64,000 bases of DNA. Origin: Bugula neritina. Lineage: Eukaryota > Animalia > Bryozoa. Made by a program: the position numbers and the translations under genes. Below are positions 1,632-63,894 of this stretch, one piece after another; position 1 is the stretch's first letter; the number at the start of each line of letters is the position of its first letter. The notes beneath the pieces were generated by a model that saw only the letters and a list, made by a program, of their open reading frames with translations, had not been told where the DNA came from and ran no database searches. The stretch lies in assembly GCA_964035545.1 (NCBI GenBank), contig OZ037771.1:569628-633627 (forward strand). The letters are read 5' to 3'.

Positions 1632-4600
1632 ATGGAGTCTATCATGAAACTAACATTCAAGGACTTGTTTGTTTGTCGTGTCTGCAATGTTAGCCAGGAA
1701 ACGCCCATTTTCTTACCATGTTACCATGTTATCTGTCAGGTAATATCTGCATCTCCTTACCATGTTATCTGTCAGGTAATGTCTGCATCTCCTTACCATG
1801 TTATCTGTCAGGTAATATCTGCATCTCCTTACCATGTTATCTGTCAGGTAATGTCTGCATCTCCTTACCATGTTATCTGTCAGGTAATATCTGCATCTCC
1901 TTACCATGTTATCTGTCAGGTAATATCTGCATCTCCTTACCATGTTATCTGTCAGGTAATATCTGCATCTCCTTACCATGCTATCTGTCAAGTAATATCT
2001 GCATCTCCTTACCATGCTATCTGTCAGGTAATATCTGCATCTCCTTACCATATGATGTAATGTTCACAGGAATGTATGAGACAAGTGCGGAACAGGAGTA
2101 ATGATGGCGAGGTTAGGGTATGTGAAGAGAACACAACTAACACACAGGCTGAGTGTGTAGACACTGAGGTAACACCTACTAGACTGGAGCATGAAGGAGT
2201 GGATCAGAGATCAGTTGGTAAAGTAACGAGGGACAGAGAAGTAGACCACACAACTCTCTCCTGCCCTGTCTGTGGATCTCAATTCACTAAAGACTCTGTT
2301 TGCATTCTTACGTCTGAAGTGTTCCAAGACCTTGGCCTAGATAAGTAACTCTAGAGATCTTGCATATGCATATATGTAGAAACTTAGTCTAATGCATGGT
2401 TATTACAATAATATATTCATTAATTCTAGCTGGTCCTATCTGTAGGCACAGAGTAGTTAACATAACTTAACCATTTTGCTGAAGCTAATGTTTAAGTGAG
2501 ATACTTTGGTATGAAAACCTAAGTTACTAAAGCTGTAAGAACAAATAGTAATAGATATAACACATGATTAGTGCTTAGTTAATGACTGTGTGACGTTATG
2601 TTATATAAGACCAGCAGTGGAGCCCTGTAGCACAGTAGCTGAATCGTCGCATACTCCATCCGAGGAGACCACCTGGTGCACTGTCTGCTCTCTACCTCCA
2701 GCATCAAAGGTGCAGTTAACTTAGTGATTCTCTTCCACTCTCTGCTACTACTTGTTGTGATGCATGTTGAAATATGGTGGCTACTAATGAAGTGGTTAGC
2801 TTTTTATTGCAGAGAGTTGAGACGACACATCAGTGTGTAGATTGTTTTGACTTCCTGTGCGAGGAATGCTCGGCAGCGCATCAAAGGACCCGACAGACAC
2901 ATGGCCATGTTGTACTTAAACTATCAGATATACTGGAAGGAAGTCCCGAGCTTGAAATGAAGAAAAGAAGTTGCCTCCCCTGTGCTAATCATACACAAAA
3001 TGCATTGGAGCTTTACTGCATGCCTTGCGAGAAGGTATATCATTGTGGCAACTTTGTGGGCAATAGCAGCCCTTTAATTAATCAGAGTTTAAATTATTGG
3101 AATTCTCAGATAATAGACTTATTATATTGTATTATTATACTTTAAATACCTTTTTATATCTTGACTTTTGGTCTAACATGCTGCACACACATTTATATAT
3201 TTATACCTCATACATGTAGTGTATATTATGTCTGTCTTTTATGCATGTTTATTATGTGTATTCATTGCCAACATTTATACAATAAATCTGTTATAATGTA
3301 TGTTTATTGTGTATATTTTAGCTGCTGTGCATAAAGTGCAAGCTAATTGATCACAATACTCATATCTGCTCAGAAATTCATGCGGCCGCAAAAAGTCATC
3401 GTGGGAAGATAGCCGCTGACAGGATCATTGAAGACACAAAACGCAATATACTGATGGAGAGTTTAGAGAGGTGCTTAGAGGTGAGGTGATGTGTGTGTTG
3501 ACTATGAGATCTGTCAGGTCTACTGTGTTGTAAACATGTAATTATACTGTGCTGTAGCTATTGGCTATTATGTAGACCTCTAAACTTGCTGTGAGTGAGG
3601 AGAAGCACCTGCTGACTAGACTGGATGACAGACTGTCACAACTGAAACACCAACTAGACATCTATTACAAGCACTTGTTCACTCGTGTCACCCAGCATTA
3701 CCAGCAGTTCAAGGAGCTCAACCAGCAGGTGCTCTTTTATTTTCACTGCAAACAAAGTATTTTAAACTTTTGACTTCTATGATATATATACTTGATCTAT
3801 ATACCATAGGTTATCACATTTAGACAGCTGATGAGATTCTAATGAGCGAGAGGTGAAGCACATAAAGTTGTCGTCTTTTTAATGTTTCAATATTGTCAGG
3901 ATACTAAGGCTAGCCTGTGTTCTTTTAGAAAGAAGAGGAACTACGAAAGAAGCTGTGTAATCTGAAAAGCTTGCAAATATTATCTGAGAGAATAGAGGTT
4001 GATGCTACTGACATCCAAGTACTTGCTAGCAAGCACCATTACACCAATAAGCATAAGGTAGAGCATATTATGTGGAGTATAATTAATATAGAGAGAGTAT
4101 GAATAGCGTGAGGTATATAGTAACACGTCATACTAGAGTATAATAATGATATTGTAGAAGTTATGTTCCCATGTCTATCCCCCAACCTTACCCCAATTAG
4201 ACAGCCTCTCTTTGAATGTTCCAAACATCACAGAGTCAGCGGTTGGTATGCTTTTTGGGAATCTGGTTACAGACGTACATAAAGGTAGGGATTCTTATGG
4301 GAAGTTGTACTGTGGTTTTATAGCTCTTAGTGAGCAAGGGCAGAACCTATACATGCTCTGTGTGTTACAGTCAAGGGGGACAGAGCACGCCCCGTCTCGC
4401 CTTGTAGAGCAGATGAGACAGTAGGAACTCATGCTAAACCCTGCGAAGATGGAGAGATCTTGCCCCTACTCTCGCCTTCTGGGAGAATATACGAGGCTTA
4501 TCACGAACTCTTACATTGTGAGTCAAAAGTTGTCAATTGCTTATAATTATAAAACAAAGACCGGCTGCTTTCAGCCATTAAATAAGTGTTAACATGCATC

Positions 4601-62100: not shown

Positions 62101-63894
62101 ACAGAGGCAGTATGTAGTGTGATGTAGCAGAGGCAGTATGTAGTGTGATGTAACAGAGGCAGTATGTAGTGTGATGTAACAGAGGCAGTATGTAGTGTGA
62201 TGTAACAGAGGCAGTATGTAGTGTGATGTAACAGAGGCAGTATGTAGTGTGATGTAATAGAGGCAGTGTGTAGTGTGATGTAACAGAGGCAGTATGTAGT
62301 GTGATGTAATAGAGGCAGTATGTAGTGTGATGTAGCAGAGGCAGTATGTAGTGTGATGTAACAGAGGCAGTATGTAGTGTGATGTAGCAGAGGCAGTATG
62401 TAGTGTGATGCAATAGAAGCAGTATATAGTGTGATGTAACAGAGGCAGTATGTAGTGTGATGTAATAGAGGCAGTATATAGTGTGATGTAATAAAGGCAG
62501 TATGTAGTGTGATGTAGCAGAGGCAGTATGTAGTGTGATGTAACAGAGGCAGTATGTAGTGTGATGTAGCAGAGACAGTATTTAGTGTGATGTAGCAGAG
62601 GCAGTATGTAGTGTGATGTAACAGAGGCAGTGTGTAGTGTGATGTAACAGAGGCAGTATTTAGTGTGATGTAACAGAGGCAGTATGTAGTGTGATGTAGC
62701 AGAGGCAGTATGTAGTGTGATGTAACAGAGGCAGTATGTAGTGTGATGTAATAGAAGCAGTATGTAGTGTGATGTAATAGAGGCAGTATTTAGTGTGATG
62801 TAATAGAGGCAGTATGTAGTGTGATGTAACAGAGGCAGTGTGTAGTGTGATGTAATAGAGGCAGTGTGTAGTGTGATGTAGCAGAGGCAGTATGTAGTGT
62901 GATGTAATAGAGGCAGTATGTAGTGTGATGTAACAGAGGCAGTGTGTAGTGTGATGTAATAAAGGCAGTATGTACTGTGATGTAGCAGAGGCAGTATGTA
63001 GTGTGATGTAACAGAGGCAGTATGTAGTGTGATGTAGCAGAGGCAGTATGTAGTGTGATGTAATAGAGGCAGTGTGTAGTGTGATGTAACAGAGGCAGTG
63101 TGTAGTGTGATGTAACAGAGGCAGTATTTAGTGTGATGTAACAGAGGCAGTGTGTAGTGTGATGTAGCAGAGGCAGTATTTAGTGTGATGTAGCAGAGGC
63201 AGTGTGTAGTGTGATGTAATAGAGGCAGTATGTAGTGTGATGTAATAGAGGCAGTATGTAGTGTGATGTAGCAGAGGCAGTATTTAGTGTGATGTAACAG
63301 AGGCAGTATGTAGTGTGATGTAGCAGAGGCAGTATGTAGTGTGATGTAGCAGAGGCAGTATGTAGTGTGATGTAGCAGAGGCAGTATGTAGTGTGATGTA
63401 GCAGAGGCAGTATGTACTGTGATGTAATAGAGGCAGTATTCAGTGTGATGTAATAGAGGCAGTATTTAGTGTGATGTAATAGAGGCAGTATGTAGTGTGA
63501 TGTAATAGAGGCAGTATGTAGTGTGACGTCAACAAACTCACCTGCTAACTAGAGACGCTATTGTCTCCATGACACTCAGTTCAGGTCTGACTAGGAAGAT
63601 GATATGATTGTAGGTATTGTTTGCAGTGTTAGCAGGTAAATCTTGTATAGATAGAGAGAACATACGGACCACATCTCTAGCCTACAATAAGTAGTTATTT
63701 TAGTAGCCAGTAGCCAGCATGCTCACCTGCAGTATCGTATAACATGGTGCTTATTTACCTGCAGTATAGTATAACACGGTGTTTATTTACCTGCAGCATA
63801 GCATCACATGTTGTTTATAATTGTTTACCTGCAACTCTGAATGCTCACAAAGAAGAGCTACCGGATTAGTGAGACTGTCATCCCAGATCAAAGC
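53149..63894 (-). CDS. VPS33A: Vacuolar protein sorting 33A (Sec1/Munc18 family), multi-exon, 5' end beyond the window
   Basis: [11 protein letters not shown]; [12 protein letters not shown]; [24 protein letters not shown]; [31 protein letters not shown]; [14 protein letters not shown]; [16 protein letters not shown]; [19 protein letters not shown]; stop 53149. Confidence 0.95.
54206..54560. repeat. 18-bp minisatellite (tatgtctagtatatactg)n
   Basis: About 20 copies in the last VPS33A intron. Confidence 0.95.
55261..55536 (-). repeat. 28-30 bp minisatellite spanning a VPS33A acceptor
   Basis: Sense unit tcagagtaagtacgtattctgtag|gtgtac, about 9 copies. Confidence 0.95.
55931..56338 (-). repeat. 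41-bp minisatellite x10 spanning a VPS33A donor
   Basis: Sense unit acatctctgatacag|gtagactcagttcctaacttgtaaga. Confidence 0.95.
56500..56697. repeat. Approximately 20-bp imperfect repeat (gagatagtatactgtaatac)n
   Basis: About 9 copies, intronic. Confidence 0.85.
58198..58597 (-). repeat. 33-bp minisatellite x12 starting just after a VPS33A donor
   Basis: (atatgattggacagtagagcaggtaacaagtag)n. Confidence 0.95.
59471..59578. repeat. (TA)n microsatellite inside a duplicated acceptor-flanking unit
   Basis: About 54 TA units flanked by copies of ataactctctacactgtatata. Confidence 0.95.
59979..60518 (-). repeat. 24-bp minisatellite, about 22 copies, spanning a VPS33A donor
   Basis: Sense unit aga|gtaagtagagttctgactagt; first donor at 60515. 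Confidence 0.95.
60741..63526 (-). repeat. 24-bp satellite (gtgatgtaacagaggcagtatgta)n, about 2.8 kb, filling a VPS33A intron
   Basis: About 116 copies between the donor at 63541 and the acceptor near 60713. Confidence 0.97.

What the first reader, a model, noticed from the sequence alone, without database searches (positions are those of the whole stretch)
1721..63832. Window-wide system: minisatellites seeded on splice junctions form ladders of repeated donor or acceptor sites
Seen: in six different genes the repeat unit is a copy of the local exon/intron boundary. Donor ladders are at 1740 (36 bp x9), 14510 (15 bp), 22495 (33 bp x14), 45758 (19 bp x3), 46348, 46874, 56322 (41 bp x10), 60515 (24 bp, about 22) and 63828 (32-38 bp x4). 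Acceptor ladders are at 26864 (40 bp x12), 33791 (28 bp, about 17), 52042 (25 bp x3), 55267 (30 bp, about 9) and 59445. Many further arrays start within about 20 nt of a junction. The units are unrelated to each other, so these are locally born amplifications rather than one mobile family, and the array always extends into the intron, leaving one intact exon copy. Intergenic DNA (e.g. 33900-36800) has almost none. Inference: either a junction-linked mutational process (transcription/splicing-coupled slippage or break repair at exon edges) or selection that only tolerates such expansions into introns. Either way the spliceosome must handle many near-identical competing sites.
Basis: partly seen in the sequence, partly recalled or inferred. 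Interest (0 to 1): 0.92.

Follow-up and report, generated by a model that had tools for sequence, protein, structure and literature searches.

The report
Intron minisatellites crowding bryozoan splice junctions
In this bryozoan, short tandem repeats fill many introns and about one in five copies a splice site (an oddity already known from lancelets and human genes), but that share is what chance predicts; what exceeds chance is repeats that stop just short of the splice site, as if they had taken over the intron.

Summary
The ladders are real and at the stated coordinates: 13 of 14 confirmed, though three carry 0-1 exon bases; 59445 is marginal. Host: Bugula neritina complex, 0.6 Mb from a chromosome-scale contig end, 31% tandem repeat. 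They are 'mirage'/F7-type junction-spanning minisatellites, a known kind.

With arrays collapsed to one unit, junction-crossing arrays are not enriched: 36 of 176 versus 33-44 expected (80 curated and 154 predicted introns). Arrays ending 1-20 nt short of a junction are enriched about threefold (71 versus 22-25). Introns with large arrays often keep under 80 nt of their own sequence (23/106 versus 2/93).

Best reading: frequent local tandem duplication in short introns, selection removing part of the junction-crossers, and expanding arrays displacing the intron up to the splice signals. A sister lineage has the same PSMD1 donor ladder with a different unit (29 versus 33 bp). One RNA contig, probably from that lineage, uses only the exon-adjacent donor. 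Not all units are private: one 19-mer is shared by three introns within 110 kb.

This scan already reported the pattern and the chance-level result on other pieces of this genome.

The parts
1721..2051 (+). Donor ladder, TRIM-NHL intron 1 (GT at 1740), 36 bp x9.2, 19 exon nt; second rung would add 12 aa in frame without a stop; intron collapses to 42 nt
5351..6019 (+). 19-bp array ending 10 nt before a TRIM-NHL acceptor; same unit as 9869-10980 and as an array about 100 kb upstream
9869..10980 (-). 19-bp array starting 11 nt after the PSMD1 intron 20 donor; shared local unit
14509..15116 (+). 15-bp array starting at the nested GPCR intron 1 donor (GT at 14510); only 1 exon nt; 29 GGTATAT words, 4 with AG|GT
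19927..20381 (-). 21-bp array starting 5 nt after the PSMD1 intron 10 donor (abutting, not crossing)
22046..22519 (-). Donor ladder, PSMD1 intron 4 (GT at 22495), 33 bp x14.4, 24 exon nt, in frame without a stop; sister lineage has a 29-bp ladder at the same junction
26397..26876 (+). Acceptor ladder, MSL3-like intron 4 (AG ends 26864), 40 bp x12, 12 exon nt; each rung is a fused AG|GT; shared with the sister lineage
32324..33210 (+). 22-bp array ending 1 nt before the MSL3-like intron 10 3' end; unit lacks the AG
33311..33795 (+). Acceptor ladder, MSL3-like intron 11 (33791), 28 bp x17, 4 exon nt; intron collapses to about 56 nt
45756..45803 (+). Short donor ladder, KCTD3 intron 3 (45758), 19 bp x2.5, 2 exon nt
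46348..46632 (+). Array starting at the GT of KCTD3 intron 5; 16 GTAAGT words, no exon base in the unit
46874..47094 (+). Degenerate 20-22-bp array starting at the GT of KCTD3 intron 6; 10 GTAAT words
50010..50885 (+). 27-bp array filling KCTD3 intron 8 (25 nt left at the 5' side, 5 nt at the 3' side)
51986..52047 (+). Short acceptor ladder, KCTD3 intron 10 (52042), 25 bp x2.5
55261..55537 (-). Acceptor ladder, VPS33A intron 10 (55267), about 30 bp x9.5, 6 exon nt; an upstream rung brings a stop
55931..56337 (-). Donor ladder, VPS33A intron 10 (56322), 41 bp x9.9, 15 exon nt, out of frame
58198..58598 (-). 33-bp array starting 6 nt after the VPS33A intron 7 donor (abutting)
59441..59589 (-). 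Marginal acceptor echo at VPS33A intron 4: three copies of an 8-mer, two of them flanking a (TA)55
59994..60518 (-). Donor ladder, VPS33A intron 3 (60515), 24 bp x21.8, 3 exon nt, identical 9-mer donors, in frame without a stop
60740..63534 (-). 26-bp x107 array filling VPS33A intron 2 (7 nt and 28 nt left; collapses to 74 nt)
63725..63833 (-). Degenerate donor ladder, first VPS33A intron in the window (63828), 32-38 bp, about 4 rungs

Best explanation
The ladders are the junction-crossing fraction of a very high load of intronic minisatellites in a distal chromosome zone. Step 1 (inferred; established for minisatellites in general): a 10-60 bp stretch is duplicated in tandem by slippage or break repair, then grows and is homogenised by unequal exchange. 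Step 2 (shown): unique intron DNA is short (median about 150-180 nt), so a blind 25-40 bp seed crosses a junction about one time in five, which is the observed share. Step 3 (geometry and selection; partly shown): a crossing duplication always leaves one complete exon, the extra rungs fall in the intron, and only those where the exon-adjacent site still wins survive. Crossers are a third to a half fewer than the host-intron null. Step 4 (one RNA contig; mechanism borrowed from F7): the exon-adjacent donor is chosen by exon definition or 5'-3' scanning, not by site strength, since the 9-mers are identical. Step 5 (inferred): once an array supplies intron length, unique flank is lost or overwritten until the array meets the splice signals, which piles array ends 5-20 nt from junctions. 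A modest birth bias near exons probably adds to this.
For: Crossers 36/176 versus 32.8-44.2 expected under three seed-length definitions, in the window and in independent neighbouring DNA. Ends 1-20 nt short of a junction: 71 versus 22-25, p<1e-4, replicated outside the window (51 versus 17-19). Collapsed length under 80 nt: 23/106 large-array introns versus 2/93 array-free, Fisher p=2e-5. This shortening follows expansion: hosts of arrays under 4 copies look like free introns (median 203 nt, 2/33 under 80), hosts of 4 or more copies do not (medians 102 and 124, 26/102). Copy number versus collapsed length rho=-0.23, p=0.002. In the sister lineage PSMD1 intron 4 keeps 36 nt of unique sequence versus 56 here, while array-free introns keep their length within about 10 nt in most cases. 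No frame bias in ladder periods (12/38 multiples of 3 versus 73/207 overall). VPS33A intron positions, as far as the contigs reach, are the same in more distant relatives that lack these arrays. RNA contig joins 22496 to 22010.
Against: Small arrays are also 2.3-2.5x enriched within 20 nt (8 versus 3.5, p=0.02; 17 versus 6.7, p=3e-4), and more homogeneous arrays lie closer to junctions (rho=-0.26), which erosion with age does not predict. Flank loss is seen directly in only one of about five shared-array introns; MSL3 intron 4 has the same 128-nt flank in both lineages. Short residual length could instead mean that arrays expand preferentially in short introns. A related bryozoan has 65-76 nt VPS33A introns, so the 80-nt floor is soft. 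Two thirds of the tested introns are predicted, not curated (cross-validated exact precision 62-86%). All data come from one 283-kb distal region.
Confidence: 0.6

Rival explanations
1. Exon-edge birth bias. Tandem duplications arise about 3x more often within some 30 nt of exon edges (transcription- or splicing-coupled R-loops, nucleosome edges at exons, or recombination breaks there). Selection then removes two thirds to three quarters of those that cross the junction, so that crossers fall back to chance level.
For: Arrays scale per intron (0.58-0.75) rather than per base up to 800 nt. Small arrays are already enriched near junctions. Non-genic DNA is depleted. The crossing-to-abutting ratio is 0.5 versus 1.3-2.0 expected.
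Against: It does not explain why only expanded arrays sit in introns with under 80 nt of unique sequence. Conditional on host intron the total within-20-nt excess is small (107 versus 95, p=0.01). Long array-free stretches include high-copy AT-rich elements (very high depth at 23551-23741 and 24697-25078) that dilute per-base rates.
Confidence: 0.27
2. Functional ladders: the repeated sites are used or kept for alternative donors that add in-frame modules (TRIM RING +12 aa, PSMD1 +11 aa, VPS33A +8 aa), for recursive splicing at fused AG|GT rungs (MSL3), or as U1 or branch-point sinks.
For: Three donor ladders are in frame and stop-free. The MSL3 40-bp consensus is unchanged between lineages whose unique introns differ by about 12%. 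Human 6-16 and CBS use the nearest pseudo-sites.
Against: Period multiples of 3 are at the background rate. The PSMD1 ladder is in frame in one lineage and out of frame in the other. The only RNA contig uses the first donor. Consensus lag is expected under concerted evolution.
Confidence: 0.06
3. Mobile seeds: arrays arrive by ectopic transfer from other arrays (conversion, template switch, circle re-insertion) and land in short introns.
For: One 19-bp unit occurs in three introns within 110 kb and nowhere else in 216 Mb. A 14-bp unit occurs at about 14 loci in local clusters.
Against: Only 3 groups with a shared unit among 198 strong arrays in 283 kb. Ladder units are locus-private and carry conserved coding sequence of their own exon.
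Confidence: 0.05
4. Assembly artefact.
For: None beyond the high unit identity (95-99%).
Against: Collapsed-repeat depth in an independent individual; the same ladders in two JGI short-read assemblies of another lineage.
Confidence: 0.02

Closest known systems
Amphioxus 'mirages' (Adh3, troponin C, globins BflGb6/9, PGBD5; PMC3087553, PMC3902484)
   Same: Locus-specific minisatellites whose unit spans an exon/intron boundary, donor or acceptor side; 10-72 bp units at Adh3; normal splicing kept; concerted evolution of units.
   Different: Described gene by gene in cephalochordates, without a null test in the papers read. Here a protostome, about one ladder per 6-7 introns, with a measured chance baseline, an excess of abutting non-crossing arrays, and a change of unit length between lineages. 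No intron gain from ladders seen here.
Human exon/intron-spanning VNTRs: F7 IVS7 (37 bp), CBS IVS13, interferon-inducible 6-16, lamin B2, PDGF (PMC1557585)
   Same: The first monomer spans the boundary and identical pseudo-donors follow; the most upstream donor is used (5'-3' scanning shown for F7).
   Different: Rare single loci in long human introns, donors only in that paper. Here common, includes acceptor ladders, and arrays often make up most of the intron.
GC/AT-mixed hypervariable minisatellites enriched toward chromosome ends (own knowledge; not checked in a paper)
   Same: 10-60 bp units, variant-unit mosaics, distal clustering suggested by positions of matches on C1 and C2, occasional transfer between loci.
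   Different: Density (31% of 283 kb) and confinement to introns are extreme; distal enrichment was not measured directly.

Membership tests
mirage / junction-spanning minisatellite | Tandem array whose unit contains an exon/intron boundary of the host gene | tested here: met
   10 arrays carry 2-24 exon nt plus the splice site; 14510, 46348 and 46874 carry only 0-1 exon nt and are borderline
mirage / junction-spanning minisatellite | Unit private to the locus | tested here: met
   PSMD1 and MSL3 ladder words match only their own array genome-wide with up to 2 mismatches; the other ladders were compared only within 283 kb
mirage / junction-spanning minisatellite | Host gene intact and spliced at the exon-adjacent copy | tested here: inconclusive
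   Open reading frames are intact with the exon-adjacent rung. One RNA contig confirms it for PSMD1 intron 4, probably in the sister lineage; contigs drop rare isoforms
mirage / junction-spanning minisatellite | Copy-number polymorphism or somatic instability | tested here: inconclusive
   Copy number and unit differ between lineages (12 versus 10 MSL3 units; 33 versus 29 bp PSMD1 unit), but short-read assemblies collapse arrays; no allelic or somatic data
mirage / junction-spanning minisatellite | Concerted evolution of units | tested here: met
   PSMD1 units are 99% alike within the window and switched wholesale to a 29-bp unit in the sister lineage, where most units share the exon's synonymous variant
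recursive-splicing ladder | Stepwise use of AG|GT points shown by intermediates in nascent RNA | not testable with these tools
   Only assembled contigs were available; 40-nt steps are below the shortest array-free intron seen (69-83 nt)
introner / duplication-born new intron (Rogers model) | Intron absent at the orthologous position in relatives | tested here: not met
   VPS33A introns 1-9 and the intron 10 donor lie at the same positions in more distant relatives; other genes not tested beyond the sister lineage
mobile (dispersed) minisatellite family | Same unit at unlinked loci | tested here: not met
   Not met for the ladders. Met for the non-junction 14-mer at 30873 and, locally only, for the 19-mer

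The most novel reading that the evidence does not exclude
In Bugula, tandem duplications are born preferentially at exon edges by a transcription- or splicing-linked process, and expanding arrays then become the structural body of the intron, so that introns whose own sequence has shrunk below spliceable length (36-60 nt) depend on the repeat. Thousands of natural ladders of identical donors and acceptors, with lineage-specific periods, would then test splice-site choice rules (scanning versus exon definition, also for acceptors) at genome scale.
Probability: 0.25. Interest if true: 0.65.

Novelty: new member of a known kind. Interest (0 to 1): 0.4.

Why it matters
The structure itself is known, so surprise is limited. 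Its value is as material. A triple-donor pattern alone gives 426 matches genome-wide versus 10 for the reversed control, so the genome holds many natural versions of the duplicated-splice-site experiment, including acceptor ladders where the last AG must win. The statistics also give a mutational reading of 'mirages': no junction-seeking process is needed for the ladders, and the real signal is arrays pressing up against the splice signals. If takeover is confirmed, it is a route by which minisatellites become required intron spacers. Practically, such ladders will mislead gene predictors and short-read assemblies in this genome.

Tried and rejected
Sponge origin (first guess from composition): dropped after the scan's notes and the JGI records. 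Junction inclusion as an enriched class: rejected under four nulls. Frame selection on ladder periods: rejected. Hairpin-seeded birth: stems in units (3.57) are no longer than in intron background (3.48 +/- 0.12). New introns from ladders: not seen for VPS33A. Intron alignment to distant bryozoans (L001-L006) was too divergent to show ancestral flanks. The read laying joint table was swamped by an AT-rich satellite, so rung use was read from contig pieces only; for MSL3 the RNA contig ends 15 nt after exon 4 and does not reach the acceptor. The original Adh3 mirage paper was not held; it is cited through PMC3087553. Several literature searches gave no genome-wide study.
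Full report
Setting. The window is G000:C7:569628-633627 of a 216-Mb genome, near one end of a 15.8-Mb contig. JGI contigs that match it at 87-98% in exons carry the prefix AY690838, the accession of the Bugula neritina mitochondrial genome. I therefore take the host to be the B. neritina complex; this is an inference. TRF gives 67 merged arrays covering 18.8 kb of the window and 31% of a contiguous 283-kb region around it.

Gene models. I curated nine genes by hand and snapped them to GT-AG with an open frame: the tail of one gene, a TRIM-NHL, a small two-exon gene, PSMD1 (981 aa), a GPCR nested in PSMD1 intron 14, an MSL3-like gene, a second GPCR, KCTD3 (620 aa) and VPS33A, with 81 introns in all. 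Single exons next to ladders match RPN2_N, Sec1, BTB_2 and RING models; 5 of 10 short exons tested had no hit. All frames stay open when the exon-adjacent rung is used. Joined models were not sent to any search tool.

The observation. Thirteen of the 14 listed sites hold. The amount of exon in the unit varies: 24, 19, 15 and 12 nt for PSMD1, TRIM, VPS33A intron 10 and MSL3 intron 4; 2-7 nt for six others; 0-1 nt for 14510, 46348 and 46874, which are arrays that merely begin at the GT. 59445 is a marginal echo. In four donor ladders the true and decoy 9-mers are identical or differ only at +6, so site strength cannot pick the rung. Three donor ladders would add 8-12 residues in frame without a stop; the others shift frame or bring a stop.

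Reality. Short-read contigs of another individual break at both ends of the PSMD1 array, with depth 554 in that bin versus about 110 in the flanks. Two JGI assemblies of a lineage about 12% diverged in introns hold the MSL3 acceptor ladder (same 40-bp consensus, 10 units in L030), the MSL3 intron 5 and 8 arrays, and a PSMD1 donor ladder. An artefact is excluded for these; exact copy numbers are not verified.

Is it more than chance? I collapsed each array to one unit plus its partial copy and placed that seed at random in the genes, discarding all-exonic placements. In the window 12-14 of 54 intronic arrays cover a splice dinucleotide versus 10.7-10.9 expected (p 0.16-0.4), while 32 lie within 20 nt versus 17. 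For an independent test I predicted introns in the neighbouring 219 kb with a small gene finder (cross-validated exact precision 62-86% depending on threshold; 154 confident introns). There 25 of 122 arrays cross a junction versus 33.8 expected, and 51 stop 1-20 nt short versus 17.2. Pooled, with three definitions of seed length: crossers 36 versus 44.2, 37.9 or 32.8, never significantly high; abutters 71 versus 22.4-24.6, p<1e-4. Conditional on the host intron, crossers are depleted (36 versus 53-63) and abutters still in excess (71 versus 32-38). So the ladders are at or below chance, and the excess is in arrays that stop at the splice signals. Strong arrays are scarce outside genes (1 in 7.8 kb versus 36 in 27.4 kb).

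What produces the abutting excess? Arrays occur at 0.58-0.75 per intron whatever the collapsed length up to 800 nt. After collapse, 23 of 106 introns with large arrays are under 80 nt (down to 37-42) versus 2 of 93 array-free introns. Hosts of arrays under four copies are not short (median 203 nt); hosts of larger arrays are (102 and 124 nt), where blind birth would predict longer hosts (about 270 nt). The simplest reading is takeover: once the array supplies length, unique flank can be lost until the splice signals stop it. One direct case supports this: PSMD1 intron 4 has 56 nt after the last donor here and 36 nt in the sister lineage, while array-free introns are 94/103, 95/95, 134/134, 274/270, 178/180 and 174/174 nt. 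Against a pure takeover model, small arrays are also 2.3-2.5x enriched near junctions, and other shared-array introns show no flank loss. A birth bias near exons, or preferential expansion in short introns, may contribute. These data cannot separate them.

Turnover. At the same PSMD1 junction the window has a 33-bp unit (24 exon + 9 intron, in frame) and the sister lineage a 29-bp unit (22 + 7, out of frame). Most sister units share their own exon's synonymous variant, and one keeps the window's variant. PSMD1 intron 6 has related 38-bp and 23-bp units. Ladders therefore predate the split or recur at the same site, are homogenised, and do not preserve frame. Periods that are multiples of three are no commoner among ladders (12/38) than among all arrays (73/207).

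Splicing. One RNA contig (depth 279) runs through PSMD1 exons 2-6 and joins 22496 to 22010 with no inserted rung. Its 6 differences in exon 4 resemble the sister lineage (98.1% identity), so it probably tests the out-of-frame 29-bp ladder, where decay would hide errors, not the in-frame 33-bp one. Contigs also drop rare isoforms. The run is only guessed to be RNA, but its exon-only pieces show a spliced transcript. First-donor use agrees with the scanning shown for human F7; CBS and 6-16 show that nearby pseudo-sites can be used.

Origin of units. The two ladder words tested occur nowhere else and encode conserved residues, so the exon is the source. Among 198 strong arrays nearly all units are private. 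Exceptions: a 19-mer in TRIM intron 10, PSMD1 intron 20 and a CBP/p300-like intron about 100 kb away (gene named from the translated sequence, not searched), absent from the rest of the genome; and a 14-mer at about 14 loci in local clusters. Units are richer in purine-pyrimidine alternation and TA than unique intron (0.62 versus 0.52; 0.17 versus 0.11) but not in hairpins.

Genome scale. A triple CAGGTAAG pattern gives 426 matches versus 10 for the reversed control; of the 19 loci listed on C1 and C2, 14 lie within about 4 Mb of position 1 or beyond 31 Mb. This shows ladders are widespread and suggests distal enrichment. It is not a test against the intron null, and the contig lengths are not known to me.

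Comparison with what is known. Tandem repeats spanning exon-intron boundaries are the amphioxus mirages (Adh3, globins, troponin C, PGBD5; PMC3087553, PMC3902484) and the human F7, CBS, 6-16, lamin B2 and PDGF VNTRs (PMC1557585). The defining anatomy is met; splicing outcome and polymorphism are only partly tested. The scan's earlier notes gave me the bryozoan and mirage leads, and several follow-ups on other pieces had reached the chance-level result and a 2.6x proximity excess (read after my own tests).

Verdict. Real, a new member of a known kind at high density, not a junction-seeded system. What this window adds is the split between crossers (chance or fewer) and abutters (3x), residual introns below the usual minimum, unit turnover at one junction between lineages, and local spread of one unit. 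Interest 0.4.

Noticed in passing
window 5351-6019, 9869-10980 and L007:5542-5957 (G000:C7:471.5 kb): The same 19-bp unit fills introns of three unrelated genes within 110 kb and matches nowhere else in 216 Mb; orientation relative to transcription is reversed in the third. Suggests short-range transfer of minisatellites between introns.
   Followed up: partly
window 30873-31477: 14-bp unit belongs to a dispersed family at about 14 loci on seven contigs, in local clusters (C4 23.8-23.9 Mb, C5 0.14 Mb, C7 0.37-0.67 Mb).
   Followed up: partly
window 4838-5064: Degenerate array ending at a TRIM-NHL acceptor holds 7 perfect TACTAAC branch-point words and several TACTGTAG words: a branch-point ladder.
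   Followed up: no
window 26397-26876 and 55261-55537: Each MSL3 rung is a fused AG|GT behind a weak true donor (GAA|GTGTTT); each VPS33A rung encloses an 11-nt pseudo-exon followed by GTAAGT. Candidates for recursive or micro-exon splicing, untested.
   Followed up: no
L030/L032 versus window 21375-21553: PSMD1 intron 6 array has a 23-bp unit in the sister lineage and a related 38-bp unit here; L030 also has a 41-bp x2.8 repeat in MSL3 intron 7 and a 28-bp duplication in intron 5 that the window lacks or holds degenerate.
   Followed up: partly
window 23551-23932 and 24697-25269; similar DNA at 44129-44603: AT-rich TAATAG-type sequence in the first introns of the head-to-head PSMD1 and MSL3 genes draws very high summed contig depth (up to 7.6e5): a high-copy element or satellite.
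   Followed up: no
window 12574-12634: Two-copy 23-bp duplication just upstream of a PSMD1 acceptor, with an out-of-frame AG in each copy; below the TRF threshold.
   Followed up: no
window 14421-18175 and 37020-42811: Two class-A GPCR-like genes; the first (491 aa, 7 exons) is nested antisense in PSMD1 intron 14.
   Followed up: no
window 36823-36998: GC-rich 20-bp x8.8 array directly after the stop codon of the second GPCR (likely 3' UTR); the only strong array outside an intron.
   Followed up: no
window 47158-47169: Possible 12-nt in-frame micro-exon (AG...GTAAG) in KCTD3 intron 6, just after the array.
   Followed up: no
public runs X2, X7, X9 versus X1: Runs X7 and X9, under the same species label as X1, and metagenome run X2 differ from the window by about 6-10% over intron-rich contigs, while X1 is near-identical: two cryptic lineages.
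   Followed up: partly
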